Source: Perkinsus chesapeaki ATCC PRA-425
Taxonomy: Eukaryota; Protista; Perkinsozoa
DNA length: 64,000 nt
Assembly: GCA_013115145.1 (NCBI GenBank)
Contig: JAAPAO010000121.1
Location: forward strand, 1 to 64,000
Direction: 5' to 3'
Shown: positions 1 to 7,535 of the stretch, piece by piece
Layout of the letters: each line of letters begins with the position of its first letter
Numbering within the stretch: position 1 is the stretch's first letter
The notes under the pieces: model-generated
Databases searched by the model: none
What the model saw: the letters and a program-made list of their open reading frames with translations, nothing else
Told to the model about the DNA's origin: nothing
Program-made: the position numbers and the translations under genes

Positions 1-71
<71 letters not shown>
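1..71. repeat. (AGT)n microsatellite at the window start
   Basis: 23 perfect AGT units at 1-69 followed by AG. Confidence 0.97.
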
Positions 72-882: not shown

Positions 883-3800
883 TCACCAGGGCTCATCAGA
901 CTCCTCAGTCTCCGAGGAGGCAGCATCGCTGGAGTCATCACTGCTATTGGCCTGCTCATCGTACTGTGCCATCTTGTCCCCCACAAATCCTGTCGGAAGG
1001 CCCATCGACCTCATCAACGCAAGTGTTGGGTCCTCCTCTTCGACCGCCTCAGCGACAACGACCTTCTTGCGCTTCGGTGAATCCTGCTCAGTCCTTTTGG
1101 ACTTCGTCACTCCCTTCTCCGCAGGATTTCGTATACAAGTGAGGAGCGTCCGCATGCCCATCTGGTCCGAAATTTGGATGGAAAAGTCCGCCACGGTTTC
1201 AGCGTCGCTTCCATCAGCACCACAACCCTCCAAATAAGCACTGAGTATCCTAACCTCCGCAGTGCAATCATAGCATCGGCAAAGCCCTGCGTCGAGTAAC
1301 GGTTGATCCGGGCCCTTCAAATGCGGGGGCCGGTCGTAGACGGCCGTTCGAAGGACCTGAGGAGCACACAGTGCCAATCTAAGGAAGTAGTAGTAGTACC
1401 GTATTGAAGTAGGCCATAGCCTCACCGAACTCTTGATTATCGTATCTGAGCAACCCCCGCTGATGAAGCTACTTTAACAAACACGTTTTCCACGATATCA
1501 TTTTACACCCTCTCGGTAAGGTCCGACTCACCAATCTGACCGCTACTCCACACTAAATTTACCATGCAAAAGTTAGTAGTTTGCAGTATGGTAATCGATT
1601 ACCATTAGTTATTAGCCTTATAATTAGGGAACAACAGCAGCCCATAATAGACCCATCTATCACCGATACTAATAACAACAAGCGTCGTCGATACGACGGC
1701 ATACACCACTGCGGCGAGGGCCTATTATTGCCTATCTCCCCAGTGGCATGCCGACCAAGCACCCTTATTATTACTCTATTATAGGGGCATCTGGTGTCTC
1801 TATAGTGAGGCGGGCTTCGGTAGTAGTCTGAGCCCCCCATATTGGATAATTTACACTACCCGAAGCATATCTTACTTTACCTTCAGTATATGGTAACCTA
1901 TACGATAGGTCAGTCAGGACTCACTCAGGAGGAGGACCACTCAGACTTACCTGAATTTCATCAAGGCTTTCTGAGGCCTCATTGCCTTCCACCAGTCGAG
2001 CTGTGATGACATGTCGGCCATCACCACTAATTGACTCATATCATCATTAAGAGATGACCACCCTACTTTTTTCATTTTGTTGGAAAGTCTGCCCCTGCCA
2101 ATTGCCGCTCCTAATATCACTCATCAGCAACACTGGTGTAGTACTGTCCTTGTATCGATGACTATTAGCTGACATAGGTAGTTATAATAATAAGCCGCTG
2201 CTCCTCCAAGCCGTGGCACTCAGTCCGATGAAACCGGTGTAATCTACTACATAGCTTGCGACTTCCAAAGCTCCAATTGTAGATCCAAGATTTTTCACAA
2301 GTACACAACTGGGAGGATTTTGTTGCAACTCTTTCGGAGGGACTCTACTATTTCGAACAAGTCTGCGTGTGCCCCTCTCCTTTGGGACTTAGTCCTAATA
2401 CCGAGTATTCCGAATAGCCTAAGATGCCAATGACTTCACGCTGGACAATAACACAGGGTAACAAGGGTAAAAGACACCCTTTCAACCTCTCCTCACAACT
2501 CGCTTCTTCCCGATAATAGTGCAATCACTCGTACGTCCTCCTTTAGTATTAAAACAGTATTCAATTCACGTAATTGAGCGAAGCCCTGCTCCACGGCCGC
2601 CCTAAACCAAAGTGCTGTGTGCTGACCTCGGTCCAAATTGAACTTCTCCTGGAAAAGCCTGAGTGTGCCAGGATCCTCCTCTGCCATCTTCCGTAGTGTC
2701 TCCACGAAAGGAGTGGTATCGTACAGCTCGAACGAGAGAGGACTCATATCGTTATGATGCCGATATGCCTGATAGGGATATAGGGACACCGCACCACACA
2801 AATACGATCGTCGCTCCTTTAAATGTACTAATCGCGGAAGTTCAATAGTTAATAAGTTTGGAAAGTCGAGAGTTAGTGACAAAGGTGAGGTGGAAGGAGG
2901 ACCTTGTAGAGAAAATGACGACCAGGAAAATGTCAATAAAGTTGGAAAAGGTTCAGTGTTGATATATACGACGATAACTCCTTTCTGCCAATGTGATGAT
3001 GATGTACAGAGCAAACTGATATGACCGTTGGTACTAGGAATTGAGTCATCTTGGAGGATGTGAGTTGAATGAAACAAATGTCGGTGCTTGAGGAGAGCGC
3101 ACAAAAACACTGTAAATGAGGGGGTGGCGAACGGGAAAGGCTTTAAGAGGCTTTCCAGAGGCCATACACACGAGGAACGCTCATTGAGTATCCTCATGCT
3201 GGCTTGTTCGATTGCTCGAGTACCTCTACCTACATTGATGAGCCTAATAAGCAAAGGTATATGGTCTCCTGGTCCAGCACCAACATACACCACTACAGCT
3301 GCTGCTTTGTTGGACGCATAGGTCATCAAGAACTCTAGCTCCGCTAGAAGCAATTTACCTGATAAGGATACATCACCCATCGCCCCCATCTATAGGAGAC
3401 ATTATCAACATAGCAACGACAGACATATCGCACTTTTGAGCGGGGAGCATTGGGGTTCTAGAGATGACACAAATCATTTCTGAGTTCAACCAGTTCGATC
3501 GTTTTCCATTCCATAACACTTGCAGTAATAACTGCTACCTCACTTCCATAATTTCCTGCCCCGCTTTCACACCACAACGACAACGCCCGAAAGTCCAGAC
3601 AAAAACGCTCTTACGTTGTCCCCAATGAAGTGTTGACTTCTCCTCATGCTCTCTACGGTGATACACTCTTCGCTTTGATAAATCTATTCCCCTTCTGAAC
3701 TCGGTATGAAGTTGCTTCCCACCGGCTGGGCTATCCAGATACCGGCAAAGCGGGTCCTTCAGCCGCTGCAGGCAATGGGGGTTACCTGAGAGTTATCTCA

Positions 3801-4349
3801 ATAGGTTTAATGCTACTCTGCCACTATCAACCAGTTTTCCGCAGACCACAAGAGCTTTCAATACATGACTCTCAGTAGGAGATCGTAACTGAATTTCGTA
3901 ACAGTCGAGAGACGTTTGTCAACCTAGACTGGTATCGGCATTCCCCCAATAACAGCAAGTACAAGTTGCTCATTACTCTCCCACTGTACTAGACTTTTAT
4001 GCTACTTCCACACTCTTAACCATATTGTAGACACTAGAGGTAAAGTAAACCTTCTGAGACGGTCTGGACTAGACTGATGTGCAAGTGAAGTTACTTCTAT
4101 CCTGCACTTTCCCCTCTACTCACCTTGCACACAGTCCCTAGTGTGCTGAGCTGCCTCAACAAAGTCTTCCTCCCAACTGCTTCGAGATGCAGACTTGAAC
4201 ATAAGATTGGTAGAGGATGATGAAGATGAGGAGGAGGACTGCTGGGTATCTAGCTCAAAAGATACTTTTCGAGGTCGCTTTCAGCCTCCCCTACCTCCTC
4301 CGCTCGCCATCGGCCGTTTCGTAGCGCCCTCTGACGACCTTCTGCCCAT
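883..4349 (-). CDS. Multi-exon cap-specific mRNA (nucleoside-2'-O)-methyltransferase, VP39/PF01358-like (kinetoplastid MTr2/MTr3-like)
   Basis: Splicing by eye recovers the family motifs in order: YHRREHEEKSTLHWGQ|RKLLLAELEFL (intron 3614-3359), VVYVGAGPGDHI, FELYDTTPF, LLMSDIRSG (~2101-2135), DMSSQLDWWKAMRPQKALMKFR|LPY, PIWGAQTTTEARL (~1810-1850) and GLCRCYDCTAEVRILSAYL (in ORF 883..1425). The 5' start (ATG 4349) is uncertain. Confidence 0.88.
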
Positions 4350-4481
4350 GATTACCCTACAAGGGAGGATCCTTCCTTCACAATAGCATAACTAACTCAA
4401 CACACGCATCCAATAATAGTGCAAATGCTATACTGTTAACGGTTATGCTCTCACTGTACTATAGGCTACTACCAAAAATCA

Positions 4482-6756
4482 TTACTGTTTCAGAGCCCGA
4501 CCTTCGCTCCGCTCAAAAGGCTCCACAATGAAGGGATGAGCCAGAGCCTCTTCAGGAGTGATCCTGTGCTTCGGGTTGAGATTGGTCATTTGATCCACCA
4601 AATCGATAAACTGCTTAGTTTTGTTTTCGAACCATCGCTTGTTGGGATCCGAATCCGACAGCTTCCGTGTGCTGTGCAGTATTCTGGCCTTCAGAGAGTC
4701 CGACCCCGGCGTGAACGTAGTGATGACCTTTACACCGCCGCCCTTCTGCTGCCACAGGAAATCACATTGCTCGTTGAAATGATGCCGCATTTCCACGAAC
4801 TTCGACGCCCTAATTTGTTTATGTGGGAACTTGCCCTTGGCATCCTGGATCTGCTTGAGCATATCATTGTTGTTTCGACCTTGGAAGAGTATCTTTCCAG
4901 TCCAGAGCTCGAACAGTGTGCACCCAATTGCCCACATATCAATTGCATAATCGTACTTGTGGTAGCCCAGCATAATTTCTGGCGCGCGGTAAAACCTGGA
5001 GACGAGGTACTCCACCACTTCTTGGGCCTCGTGGATCTCACAAGCGCTGCCCAGATCGCATATCTTAAGATGACCGTGGTTTTTTGAAATTAAAATATTA
5101 TCAGGTTTTATATCGGCGTGAATAATCTTGCAGCTCTTCATGTGTTTCAAAGCCAACAACAGCTGCCTTGAATAGGACCACACCGCCTTCGGATTCAGAC
5201 CACGCTCGCCGGGACGCGCATACTTCTTCATAGCCTCTCTCAGGTTGCTCCAGAGGGACTCGAAGACCAGGCAAAGATGACCTTGATAGGTGAAGGTACG
5301 GAGCAACCGGACGATATGGCTGCGGTCACGGCCGGACTTGTCCTTGGTCATCATTTCATCGGCGGAATCGTTCAACTTGGTGAGAATGCGGACCTCCTTC
5401 TCCGCAGCCTTCCTCATCATATCATTACGACGAATAACTTTGATAGCAACATCTTGCAACCTGATTAAAAAATCGTATTCCTTAGCGGAGCGAAGCACCT
5501 ACGTTTGAGTATCTTTGCACTTCACCACATTAGAAAAGACCCCCTTGCCCACATCAGAGTCGCTCGACGTCAGCACAACATAACGACCGTCCATTGTCTC
5601 CAGATGCCCCGGAACAAAGTACCTAAACAAACAAGGATCGACGCTGCACTGAGCATACCAACGAGAACCACACCTACCCTTCCTTGTCATCATTTTGACC
5701 ATCTTCCTCCTGCACACCCAGATCCCTTTGCTTAACTCTTTCATCGTAGATCTCCTTGGCACGTTTCAGCATGATATTGATCTCAGCATCGGTCACTTGA
5801 GCCTTCTCATCAGACACCAATGCATTGGCAGTCTCAGCCGCCTTCCGCCTCATAGTCTCATCAGCAGCCTCCTTAAGTCTCCTTATCTCCGCCAGTGCCT
5901 TCGCCTGCGTGGCCGCCATCTTGGCCTTCAGTGCCTCCAGTCCCGATGGCAGCGCCGCATTGGCCGTCGATGGCTTCTCTTCTCGCTGGGGAGTCTCGTC
6001 TGACGATGAAGGGGATTCATGTTCAGGTGGATGGGCCGCCGCCGAGGGCGAGCTGAGATCGCTGACGGACATCATGCCCTTGTCGCTCTCATCATCATCC
6101 GGGCTGGGCGCCGCGCACAGCATTATGCTCTCTTTTCCACTCGCCACGCTCACGCTTCCACCTAAGATACCAACTAAAATACAATAACCCTACATTAGCC
6201 TACCGATTGACGGTTTCACGCTGGCGTCCCTTTCCCTCTTCCTGGCCATTTCCTGCTCTGTCAGCTTCCTCTGTAATTTCCGACGTTCCTCGCGACGCTT
6301 TTGTATGGCGGCGTCCGAGTTGGCGTCCATCGCCTCCATAGATGACTCCAAGGCGTCCACGAGCTTATCATCCATCTCAATATCCTCATCAGAGTGATGA
6401 TGGCTTCTGGATCTCCTCGTACTTCTACTTCGGCTCCTATGACGCCTATGCGAGCGCATCGAACTTTCATGGTCTCCACGTCGGCGAGTGTCGTCATAGT
6501 CTCGTGAGCCACGACGATGATAATCATTGCCACGAGAAGATGATCTAATATGGTCTCCATGGTGATGTCGGTGGTCATGATGACTTGAGGCTAGTCTGGA
6601 GTCGTCGGGGGGAGAGGGGCGACGGGAGGAGGAGGAGGACTCAGGACCCTTACGATCATAACTGCTGCCTCGGTAACTGCCGCTTGGTCTTGATCGATGA
6701 TTGCTGCTGTCGTAGTTGTTGTAGGAATCACTGCGTTGTGCTCTGCTGCTAGACAT
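4482..6756 (-). CDS. PRP4: PRP4-family pre-mRNA splicing Ser/Thr kinase, multi-exon, with RS/His-rich N-terminus
   Basis: Kinase motifs VAIKVIRRNDMMRKAAEKE, HLCLVFESL, IIHADIKPDNIL, LKICDLGSA, EYLVSRFYRAPE and GKGVFSNVVKC. The N-terminal ORFs 6190..6822 and 5674..6153 are RS-rich and charged. Confidence 0.93.
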
Positions 6757-7535
6757 AACGTAGCGAAGAATGAAGGCCAGCACGGACACTGAAAGCTCAA
6801 AGTGAGAACAAATGCACAGCAATACACGAGCTTGATCTATTTTGTATCAAAAGCGAATCAACCTAAGATACGCGGCTAACCCGAGCCATTTTCAACACTA
6901 CCAATGAACTCAAATCCGGATAGGAAGTGGCATCCGGTTCTTCACTCAGGCACCCTTCGGCGCATCATGCTGCTCTCGTGGTTCAAGATGATGATCAATA
7001 ATAACCTATCATTAGTACAACGACAATAACAGTATAGCCGATAAGGCCAGCTTTAAGCCAGGATGCACCTTTTAGGATGTCTTCTCCGCCGCTGGTATTA
7101 GCAGGGGCAATCTCCGAGGCTGCTCTTATCTAAGGGAAGGTATCCCAGGTGTCAATCCTCCACTGAAAGATTCAAAATAGGTTAGTTGAGCAACCTTAGA
7201 GGAGCCCACAAGGGAGATATGAGACCCGAAGGATGGAACTATTGGACCACTTCCCGCCCTACAGCGGTCGTACAGTACAAGATTACCAGAAAATCTTCAG
7301 AGTGCGATTAAGATACAAGATACGGAATAGATCAGTAGGGAGACCACTTCTCGACCATTGCTTACGATTAAGGTTCCTTTCCAATCCCTCAAGGGAACAT
7401 TACCCTCAAATTTCATTTTTACATAGCAATAACATGCAGCACGTGAAACCACCGATACATTAAGGAAACGCAAGATCTTACAAGATTGCAAGATTTAATG
7501 AGCGCGCCCTCCCAGTGGCTTCGTTGAGCTCCACG

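What the first reader, a model, noticed from the sequence alone, without database searches (positions are those of the whole stretch)
883..4349. Intron-containing VP39-like cap 2'-O-methyltransferase, a candidate spliced-leader cap-modifying enzyme
Seen: the ORF track shows only fragments, but splicing reconstructs a full VP39-family domain with all four catalytic positions (K in GQRKLL, D in SDIR, K in MKFR, E in TTEAR) plus the SAM loop VYVGAGPG. Established: this fold is the poxvirus cap MTase VP39, and kinetoplastids use VP39-like MTr2/MTr3 enzymes to build cap-4 on their spliced leader; Perkinsus also trans-splices a leader. Inference: this organism may hypermethylate its SL cap with a parallel enzyme, a pathway I do not know to be described here. 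The gene lies 133 bp downstream of the splicing kinase PRP4 on the same strand.
Basis: partly seen in the sequence, partly recalled or inferred. Interest (0 to 1): 0.72.

Follow-up and report, generated by a model that had tools for sequence, protein, structure and literature searches.

The report
Spliced Perkinsus VP39-type cap methyltransferase gene
This is a real, expressed, ten-exon gene of a Perkinsus-type parasite that encodes an RNA cap ribose methyltransferase of the poxvirus VP39 / trypanosome MTr2 family. It probably methylates the spliced-leader cap, but the family's presence in Perkinsus was already reported in 2011 and its target is still untested.

Summary
On the minus strand of 883-4356 lies a 10-exon gene of 479 codons.

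- **Splicing:** seven GT..AG introns are shown directly by spliced RNA contigs from two studies. The last two introns are inferred from an orthologous locus in a second, divergent Perkinsus-like contig.
- **Trans-splicing:** the mRNA carries a spliced leader joined 7 nt before the ATG.
- **Family:** the exons map one after another, in order, onto a profile built from 22 PF01358 proteins. That profile matches only VP39 among solved structures (E 2.7e-40).
- **Selection:** the ortholog shows strong purifying selection (pN 0.16 against pS 0.81).
- **Organism:** the genome encodes the Perkinsus-type leader (…CATCTTGG…).

It is a VP39/TbMTr2-family cap 2'-O-methyltransferase, and in this organism the capped substrate is most likely the SL RNA. 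Which position it methylates, and whether Perkinsus hypermethylates its SL cap, remain untested.

The idea is not new. Werner et al. 2011 listed a P. marinus member of the TbMTr2 branch, and heavy 2'-O-methylation of a dinoflagellate SL has been reported. The family also occurs in organisms not reported to trans-splice.

Verdict: a sound annotation, a new member of a known kind, of modest interest.

The parts
4357..4358 (-). AG acceptor for spliced-leader trans-splicing. The first mRNA nucleotide of the gene is 4356, giving a 7-nt 5' UTR before the ATG.
   Evidence: contigs of X2 and X5 continue beyond 4358 with the reverse complement CCGTAGCCATTTTGGCTCA. The AG that follows is shared with the genome. 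One search shows a pyrimidine-rich tract (TCCTCCCTTGT) before the AG. Caveat: the libraries are labelled RT-PCR, and the TTTT version is the dinoflagellate leader, probably a primer. The genome itself encodes TCTT.
4295..4356 (-). Exon 1, with the ATG at 4349-4347 and 18 whole codons.
   Evidence: RNA contigs; frame; ortholog 53% identical.
4124..4249 (-). Exon 2: a Ser-rich, poorly conserved N-terminal region.
   Evidence: The junctions 4295|4249 and 4124|3785 are in RNA contigs; ortholog 70% identical.
3615..3785 (-). Exon 3: the start of the methyltransferase domain. It ends in ...RRVYHRREHEEKSTLHWGQ(R). The Y aligns with VP39 Y22, a cap-stacking residue.
   Evidence: In one search it maps to profile positions 36-58. 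In one search VP39 Y22 lies in the same profile column. Ortholog 86% identical.
3234..3358 (-). Exon 4: catalytic K119 (3356-3354, equivalent to VP39 K41) and the SAM-binding loop VYVGAGPG (3290-3267).
   Evidence: Pfam PF01358 E 3.9e-4. All 12 matches among solved structures are VP39, with K aligned to K41. 43.5 bits against the family profile at positions 60-99.
2627..2768 (-). Exon 5: a variable part of the domain. It contains ...FELYDTTPF, the candidate for the acidic motif that binds the SAM ribose.
   Evidence: RNA junctions. The profile match is only weak (positions 103-119, -1.5 bits). Ortholog 68% identical.
2067..2168 (-). Exon 6: LLMSDIRSG with catalytic D224 (2118-2116, equivalent to VP39 D138).
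   Evidence: Profile positions 136-164. The motif is identical in the ortholog.
1951..2026 (-). Exon 7: ...WWKAMRPQKALMKF(R) with catalytic K264 (1958-1956, equivalent to VP39 K175).
   Evidence: Profile positions 167-190. Ortholog 83% identical.
1775..1897 (-). Exon 8: LPY (the Y aligns with VP39 F180, a cap-stacking residue) and TTTEARL with catalytic E293 (1818-1816, equivalent to VP39 E207).
   Evidence: The 5' junction 1951|1897 comes from loose ends of RNA contigs. The 3' end at 1775 is inferred from the donor GTAATA and the conserved ortholog junction. Profile positions 207-237.
1400..1445 (-). Exon 9 (inferred): (E)YDNQEFGEAMAYFNT.
   Evidence: Splice sites. 93% identical in the ortholog, with introns at the same positions and phases. 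Profile positions 245-259. No RNA contig was shown over it.
883..1356 (-). Exon 10 (5' end inferred) with stop TGA at 885-883. It holds the end of the domain (GLCRCYDCTAEVRILSAY, 1275-1264 for CYDC), then an acidic/basic tail with KRKK, a conserved EEDPTLALMRSMGLPTGFVGDK (1038-973) and a C-terminal ESDEPW.
   Evidence: Profile positions 262-366 at 30.4 bits. Ortholog 69% identical, with the tail motifs identical.
4482..5498 (-). Upstream neighbour: the last exon of a PRP4-type protein kinase. Context only, not part of the gene.
   Evidence: Pkinase E 2e-47. The best named solved relatives are PRP4 homologs at E about 1e-76, against DYRK at 1e-39. The same neighbour lies upstream in the ortholog locus L009.

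Best explanation
This is a nuclear, single-copy, 10-exon gene of a Perkinsus-type alveolate. Its mRNA is itself SL trans-spliced. It encodes a 479-residue cap-specific mRNA (nucleoside-2'-O-)-methyltransferase of the VP39/TbMTr2 family (Pfam PF01358).

**Shown:**
- the exon structure and expression;
- family membership at the sequence level;
- an intact K119-D224-K264-E293 tetrad and the SAM loop;
- aromatic residues at the two cap-stacking positions;
- strong purifying selection.

**Inferred mechanism:** the enzyme binds the m7G cap between the two aromatic residues and transfers a methyl group from SAM to the 2'-OH of a cap-adjacent ribose. Because mRNAs here receive their cap with the spliced leader, the substrate is most probably the SL RNA 5' end (m7GpppACCG...). 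The likeliest site is a position after the first nucleotide, position 2. This rests on the published placement of the P. marinus protein in the TbMTr2 (cap2) branch. It would contribute to a multiply methylated SL cap like the one reported for dinoflagellates.
For: **Splicing and expression**
- Spliced RNA contigs from two studies confirm seven GT..AG introns and an SL at the 5' end (coordinates refined).
- The full model gives one open 479-codon frame.

**Family**
- Exon 4 hits PF01358.
- Among solved structures, exon 4 matches only VP39, with K aligned to K41.
- A profile of 22 PF01358 proteins matches only VP39 chains in the PDB, at E 2.7e-40.
- That profile matches exons 3, 4 and 6-10 collinearly, summing to about 146 bits; exon 5 aligns in register but scores below zero. 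K, D, K and E fall in the catalytic columns.
- A six-frame control over the whole window finds nothing else.

**Conservation**
- The ortholog locus L009 keeps all ten exons, the intron positions and phases, and the motifs.
- pN is 0.16 against a saturated pS of 0.81.

**Organism**
- The genome encodes at least 16 exact Perkinsus-type SL exons and a canonical SL RNA gene.

**Literature**
- A P. marinus member sits in the TbMTr2 branch (PMC3113572).
- The dinoflagellate SL is heavily 2'-O-methylated, and trypanosome-type 2'-O-methyltransferases are in the transcriptome (10.1101/2024.02.20.581179).
- A cap m7GpppA(U)CmCmG has been proposed for dinoflagellates (PMC3388326).
Against: - There is no biochemical or cap-structure data for Perkinsus, and I found no paper that determined its SL cap.
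- Werner et al. 2011 list Paramecium, Naegleria and Monosiga in the same family branch. These are not known to use SL trans-splicing (my own knowledge), so presence does not imply SL-specific hypermethylation.
- Positional specificity cannot be read from homology. VP39 itself can methylate up to three cap-adjacent nucleotides of a trypanosome SL substrate in vitro (PMC9479742).
- The residue aligned with the cap-contacting E233 of VP39 is Gly in both Perkinsus sequences, with Glu one position later.
- The motif II match in exon 5 is weak.
- The TbMTr2-branch placement was not re-tested here, because no named trypanosome sequences could be obtained.
- The 3' exons lack direct RNA support in the contigs shown.
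- The SL evidence comes from RT-PCR libraries that probably used an SL primer.
Confidence: 0.6

Rival explanations
1. It is a housekeeping cap1 or cap2 methyltransferase. It acts on any m7G-capped Pol II transcript, including snRNA precursors and mRNAs that are not trans-spliced. It has no special role in a hypermethylated SL cap, and it works redundantly with the FtsJ-type CMTr1 and CMTr2 homologs of the genome.
For: The TbMTr2-like family includes Paramecium, Naegleria and Monosiga (PMC3113572), which are not known to trans-splice (my own knowledge). P. marinus is reported to have one hMTr1 and two hMTr2 orthologs as well. This genome has at least seven loci with FtsJ-domain matches. Cap methyltransferases show overlapping positional activity (PMC9479742).
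Against: In an organism where mRNAs obtain their cap from the SL RNA, a cap-dependent enzyme will meet mostly SL 5' ends, so the distinction is partly semantic. The sister lineage shows multiple 2'-O-methyl riboses in the SL.
Confidence: 0.27
2. It is a giant-virus-derived gene: a recent insertion or a contaminating viral contig, rather than a functional host gene.
For: The closest full-length database relatives lie on dense, intron-less contigs. For P0029 the contig is also AT-rich (L010, 27.5% GC, with ribonucleotide reductase, TFIIS and photolyase). For P0036 only the gene table was available, not the DNA. The family is described as horizontally mobile (PMC3113572).
Against: The gene has nine spliceosomal introns and SL trans-splicing. 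Its GC content is that of the host. It sits between host genes. The same PRP4 kinase neighbour and the same intron positions are kept in a species so divergent that synonymous sites are saturated. Any transfer would be ancient, and the gene is now a host gene.
Confidence: 0.04
3. The protein has lost or changed cap recognition. It would then serve another function, for example as a poly(A) polymerase processivity factor like VP39's second role, or as a methyltransferase for internal riboses.
For: The position aligned with VP39 E233 is Gly. There are long lineage-specific N- and C-terminal extensions with conserved short motifs of unknown function.
Against: The catalytic tetrad, the SAM loop and both aromatic cap-stacking positions are conserved under strong purifying selection. 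VP39's poly(A) role depends on the poxviral VP55 partner (my own knowledge); I did not look for a homolog here.
Confidence: 0.05

Closest known systems
Vaccinia virus VP39, cap-specific mRNA (nucleoside-2'-O-)-methyltransferase (Pfam PF01358; PDB 1AV6, 1VP3 and others)
   Same: It is the only solved relative found. The K41-D138-K175-E207 tetrad, the SAM loop and the aromatic residues at the Y22 and F180 positions are all matched.
   Different: VP39 is a 333-residue viral protein with no introns. It makes cap1 and doubles as a poly(A) polymerase subunit. The Perkinsus protein has 479 residues, with about 95 extra N-terminal and about 95 extra C-terminal residues. It has Gly at the E233-aligned position and is a spliced host gene.
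Trypanosoma brucei TbMTr2 (TbCom1/TbMT48, cap2) and TbMTr3 (TbMT57, cap3/4)
   Same: These are VP39-like enzymes of an SL trans-splicing protist that methylate SL cap-adjacent riboses. Werner et al. 2011 place the P. marinus protein in the TbMTr2 branch.
   Different: The lineage is different (Euglenozoa), with a 39-nt SL and a biochemically defined cap 4. Only one PF01358 gene is detectable in this genome, against two in trypanosomes. Orthology was not re-tested here.
The P. marinus 'TbMTr2 ortholog' listed by Werner et al. 2011 (NAR 39:4756, PMC3113572)
   Same: It is almost certainly the same gene family member in the same genus. It was already interpreted there as a cap 2'-O-ribose methyltransferase.
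   Different: That paper gives no gene structure, expression data or SL context. I could not retrieve its accession: the supplement is not held and the word searches found no annotated protein. Identity with that entry is therefore inferred.
Acanthamoeba castellanii medusavirus Cap3MTase and other giant-virus PF01358 proteins
   Same: They share the fold family, the K-D-K-E tetrad and a Y-Y-E-type cap-binding motif (PMC13393146). Giant-virus-like proteins are the nearest full-length database relatives, with 41-53% identity in exons 4 and 8.
   Different: They are viral and intron-less. The medusavirus enzyme has demonstrated cap3 activity in vitro, whereas the position used by the Perkinsus enzyme is unknown.

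Membership tests
VP39-type cap 2'-O-methyltransferases (Pfam PF01358, PARP_regulatory) | Significant, collinear sequence match to the family profile over the whole domain | tested here: met
   The test was done exon by exon. Seven exons hit a profile of 22 PF01358 proteins in order, at positions 36-58, 60-99, 136-164, 167-190, 207-237, 245-259 and 262-366. The scores sum to about 146 bits. The control over the whole window is clean. The same profile hits VP39 at E 2.7e-40.
VP39-type cap 2'-O-methyltransferases (Pfam PF01358, PARP_regulatory) | Full-length protein scores above Pfam's gathering threshold (25.4 bits) | not tested
Only single exons could be scanned by reference. Exon 4 alone gives 19.9 bits, E 3.9e-4.
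VP39-type cap 2'-O-methyltransferases (Pfam PF01358, PARP_regulatory) | K-D-K-E catalytic tetrad | tested here: met
   K119, D224, K264 and E293 lie in the columns of VP39 K41, D138, K175 and E207. All four are identical in the ortholog.
VP39-type cap 2'-O-methyltransferases (Pfam PF01358, PARP_regulatory) | SAM-binding motif I (VVYxGxxPG) and the acidic motif II residue | tested here: inconclusive
   Motif I, VVVYVGAGPG, is clearly present. The motif II candidate is the D in FELYDTTPF, against the family's invariant LVDPAPF. Its exon aligns only weakly, at -1.5 bits.
VP39-type cap 2'-O-methyltransferases (Pfam PF01358, PARP_regulatory) | m7G cap pocket: two stacking aromatic residues (VP39 Y22, F180) and acidic contacts (D182, E233) | tested here: inconclusive
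   A Y lies at the Y22 column (RRVY, 11 residues before HWGQRK, as in the family consensus). A Y lies at the F180 column (KFRLPY), and an E at the D182 column. The E233 column holds G, with E at +1, in both Perkinsus sequences. Which VP39 residues contact the cap is taken from my own knowledge and from PMC13393146.
VP39-type cap 2'-O-methyltransferases (Pfam PF01358, PARP_regulatory) | VP39-like Rossmann-type fold | not tested
   Folding needs the joined protein, which has no reference.
VP39-type cap 2'-O-methyltransferases (Pfam PF01358, PARP_regulatory) | Cap-dependent 2'-O-methyl transfer from SAM | not testable with these tools
   This needs a recombinant enzyme assay.
TbMTr2 (cap2) orthologous group | Phylogenetic placement with T. 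brucei TbMTr2 rather than with TbMTr3 or viral VP39 | not tested
   No named trypanosome sequences could be obtained, and the database relatives carry no organism names. The only support is the statement of Werner et al. 2011 for P. marinus.
CMTr1/CMTr2 (FtsJ, PF01728) cap methyltransferases | FtsJ-type domain match | tested here: not met
   The Pfam scan of the exons returned only PF01358. The genome's FtsJ matches lie at other loci.

The most novel reading that the evidence does not exclude
Perkinsozoa, and by extension Dinozoa, build a multiply ribose-methylated spliced-leader cap using this single VP39/TbMTr2-type enzyme for positions beyond +1. Two unrelated trans-splicing lineages, kinetoplastids and dinozoans, would then have independently recruited the same virus-related enzyme family for SL cap hypermethylation. 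The conserved C-terminal motif (…ALMRSMGLPTGF… ESDEPW) might dock the enzyme to the SL RNP.
Probability: 0.35. Interest if true: 0.5.

Novelty: new member of a known kind. Interest (0 to 1): 0.3.

Why it matters
The report gives a correct, evidence-backed model for a gene that ORF-based callers break up. The public protein collection holds only a 154-residue ORF fragment of the ortholog (P0002).

It identifies a single, testable candidate writer of ribose methylation on the Perkinsus spliced-leader cap. Perkinsus is a culturable oyster parasite related to dinoflagellates, whose SL is reported to be heavily methylated by enzymes that have not been identified.

If the enzyme proved to act on SL positions 2-4, that would show convergent use of VP39-type enzymes in two independent trans-splicing lineages. 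It would also help explain the many eIF4E forms found in these organisms.

As it stands, this is an annotation-level result in a family already catalogued for P. marinus in 2011.

Tried and rejected
- **Word-index protein searches.** Searches with exon 4 alone and with the whole 298-aa ORF (exon 4, the in-frame intron 4 and exon 5) found nothing. No annotated Perkinsus protein could be retrieved.
- **Exhaustive representative search.** It gave three hits. P0001 is a repetitive protein that matches only intron-encoded residues, so I rejected it as spurious. P0002 is an ORF fragment of the ortholog. P0003 is an 838-aa tandem double-domain relative.
- **Solved-structure searches with single exons.** Exons 6, 8 and 10 gave only chance hits to designed repeat proteins, or nothing.
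- **ESM Atlas look-up of exon 4.** It gave only generic methyltransferase clusters below 0.9, which is not evidence.
- **Paralog search in the genome.** A family search and a DNA search both found a single copy. The roughly 90% identical second transcript seen in X1 and X4 is therefore not in this assembly.
- **Large introns 4 and 5 as repeats or mobile elements.** Both are unique in the genome.
- **Naming the relatives for a labelled tree.** Cluster look-ups returned almost no names, so I built no phylogeny.
- **Looking for DinoSL on relatives' contigs.** None was found.
- **The supplement of Werner et al. 2011.** It is not held.
- **The motif MGLPTGF in the literature.** No paper was found.
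- **The joined protein.** It was assembled only inside a local script, to check frame and residue numbers. It was not sent to any search or fold tool.
Full report
**Observation.** The gene lies on the minus strand.
- HWGQRK at about 3620;
- KLLLAELEFL…VVVYVGAGPGDH in the 298-aa ORF 3389-2496;
- LLMSDIRSG at about 2120;
- KALMKFR at about 1955;
- GAQTTTEARL at about 1820.

The ATG at 4349-4347 and the stop at 885-883 match the coordinates given.

**RNA evidence.** Six small RNA runs hold parts of the stretch, and I laid four of them on it. Contigs from two studies (X1/X4 of 'organism A'; X2/X5, marine metatranscriptome 454 RT-PCR libraries) are spliced. After resolving the alignment ambiguities, the introns on the + strand are:
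- 4250-4294 (45 nt)
- 3786-4123 (338 nt)
- 3359-3614 (256 nt)
- 2769-3233 (465 nt)
- 2169-2626 (458 nt)
- 2027-2066 (40 nt)
- 1898-1950 (53 nt)

All are GT..AG on the minus strand, and all leave the frame open.

X2 and X5 contigs continue upstream of 4358 with the reverse complement CCGTAGCCATTTTGGCTCA, which is a spliced leader. It is joined at the AG 4358-4357, which follows a pyrimidine tract, 7 nt before the ATG. The TTTT form is the dinoflagellate leader. Because the libraries are RT-PCR, it is probably the primer's sequence. The join still shows that an SL-bearing cDNA existed.

A second transcript about 90% identical is present in X1 and X4, but it has no locus in this assembly.

**The 3' exons.** No contig shown covered positions below 1792. 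From splice signals and frame I inferred two more introns, 1446-1774 (329 nt) and 1357-1399 (43 nt). These give exon 8 at 1897-1775, exon 9 at 1445-1400 and exon 10 at 1356-886. The ten exons form one open frame of 479 codons plus TGA.

**Independent support from an ortholog.** The exhaustive protein search found P0002, a 154-aa ORF 80% identical to exon 4. Its 27.6-kb contig (L009) carries the orthologous locus, with a protein kinase gene directly upstream.
- DNA similarity is confined to the exons.
- All ten exons are found in order, with 53-93% amino-acid identity and identical catalytic motifs.
- Every intron sits at the same position and phase with GT..AG, including the two I inferred. 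The introns there are only 47-112 nt.
- Synonymous sites are saturated (pS 0.81) while pN is 0.16, or 0.11 in exons 3-9. This is strong purifying selection.

**Family.**
- Pfam matches exon 4 to PF01358 (19.9 bits, E 3.9e-4, profile 36-77). A six-frame scan of the whole 41.7-Mb genome finds this as the only PF01358 match.
- Exon 4 alone matches only VP39 chains among solved structures (12 of 12). Its first residue aligns on K41.
- Using the distant relative P0003 as a bridge, I retrieved 42 proteins, 41 of which carry a precomputed PF01358 domain.
- A profile of 22 of them (A1) hits only VP39 in the PDB, at E 2.7e-40.
- Run exon by exon, that profile matches exons 3, 4 and 6-10 in perfect order. 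Exon 5 aligns in register between them but scores below zero. The scores sum to about 146 bits. K119, D224, K264 and E293 fall in the columns of VP39 K41, D138, K175 and E207.
- As a control, the profile hits no other segment among 2,971 six-frame segments of the window.
- Aromatic residues occupy the columns of the cap-stacking Y22 and F180.
- The column of E233 holds Gly, with Glu one residue later, in both Perkinsus sequences.
- The motif II match in exon 5 is weak.

The Pfam threshold on the full protein and the fold therefore remain untested.

**Organism.** The genome contains at least 16 exact copies of CCGTAGCCATCTTGGCTCAAG, the TCTT form that distinguishes Perkinsus from dinoflagellates (PMC9399869). 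One copy is followed by GTAA as in an SL RNA gene. This is a Perkinsus-type genome.

**Function.** What is shown is an intact, conserved, expressed VP39-family enzyme. What is inferred is its substrate. In an organism whose mRNAs receive their cap with the SL, a cap-dependent ribose methyltransferase will act mainly on the SL RNA 5' end (ACCG…). The relevant literature is as follows:
- Werner et al. 2011 placed a P. marinus protein in the TbMTr2 (cap2) branch, alongside one hMTr1 and two hMTr2 orthologs.
- A review reported a proposed dinoflagellate cap m7GpppA(U)CmCmG (PMC3388326).
- A 2024 preprint found m7G plus many 2'-O-methyl A and G in the Amphidinium SL, with trypanosome-type 2'-O-methyltransferase transcripts.
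- I found no determination of the Perkinsus SL cap.

Against a specific SL role, the same family branch includes Paramecium, Naegleria and Monosiga, which are not known to trans-splice (my own knowledge). VP39-type enzymes also show loose positional specificity in vitro.

**Viral affinity.** The nearest full-length database relatives sit on dense, intron-less contigs. For L010 the contig is also AT-rich (27.5% GC) and carries ribonucleotide reductase, TFIIS and photolyase. This fits the 'horizontally mobile family' of Werner et al. The Perkinsus gene itself has nine introns, an SL, host GC content and conserved synteny, so it is a long-resident host gene.

**The PRP4 neighbour.** The upstream ORF is a PRP4-type kinase. 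About 132 nt separate its stop from the ATG, and 123 nt separate it from the SL acceptor. The adjacency is conserved in L009. It says nothing by itself about function. It does imply a very short intergenic spacer, which SL addition resolves.

**Verdict.** The family assignment is sound. The SL-cap role is plausible but untested, and it was largely anticipated in the literature. This is a new member of a known kind, of modest interest.

Noticed in passing
window 2769-3233 (intron 4, minus strand): Intron 4 is 465 nt, a multiple of three, and has no stop codon. Together with exons 4 and 5 it forms a 298-aa ORF (3389-2496) that ORF callers would take for a protein. RNA contigs show it spliced out. 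If retained, it would insert 155 residues between the SAM loop and motif II.
   Followed up: partly
window introns 2, 3, 4, 5 and 8, compared with L009:4880-6120: Five introns of this gene are 256-465 nt here, but only 47-112 nt at the same positions in the orthologous locus. Introns 4 and 5 are unique in the genome, so they are not copies of a repeat.
   Followed up: partly
G000:C8:829-849 and 7019-7039 (L002, L003); C476:59540-59560 (L006); C553:61306-61326 (L007): Several genomic copies of the 21-nt SL exon are not followed by the GTAA intron start. Instead they are followed by other sequence, which is nearly identical between L002 and L003 and between L006 and L007. They look like relic leaders in front of retroposed or duplicated genes, as described for dinoflagellates. 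Only L005 looks like a canonical SL RNA gene.
   Followed up: no
RNA runs X1 and X4 over window 2627-2765, 3233-3287 and 3610-3722: A second spliced transcript, about 88-92% identical and with the same exon junctions, co-occurs with the 100% identical one. The assembly has no second locus. It may be an uncollapsed haplotype, a missing paralog or a second strain.
   Followed up: partly
window 1038-973 and 903-886 (minus strand, C-terminal tail): The low-complexity tail holds two short stretches that are identical in the divergent ortholog: EEDPTLALMRSMGLPTGFVGDK and the C-terminal ESDEPW. A KRKK cluster lies before them. They have no Pfam match and no literature hit. They may be docking or localisation motifs.
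   Followed up: partly
P0003 / P0071 (838 aa); L010: P0003 carries two tandem VP39-like domains. Its twin P0071 is filed in NCBI as a 'candidate division WOR-3 bacterium' MAG protein on a 335-kb contig, which is probably a misbinned giant-virus contig. P0029, the relative most similar to the Perkinsus exons, sits on a 27.5% GC contig with ribonucleotide reductase, TFIIS, photolyase and RNase T2.
   Followed up: partly
window 1-71: The window starts with a perfect (AGT)n microsatellite of about 70 nt.
   Followed up: no
window 4359-4481: Only about 123 nt separate the PRP4-kinase stop codon from the SL acceptor of the methyltransferase gene. The same gene order is kept in L009. This is consistent with tightly packed genes whose transcripts are resolved by SL addition.
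   Followed up: no
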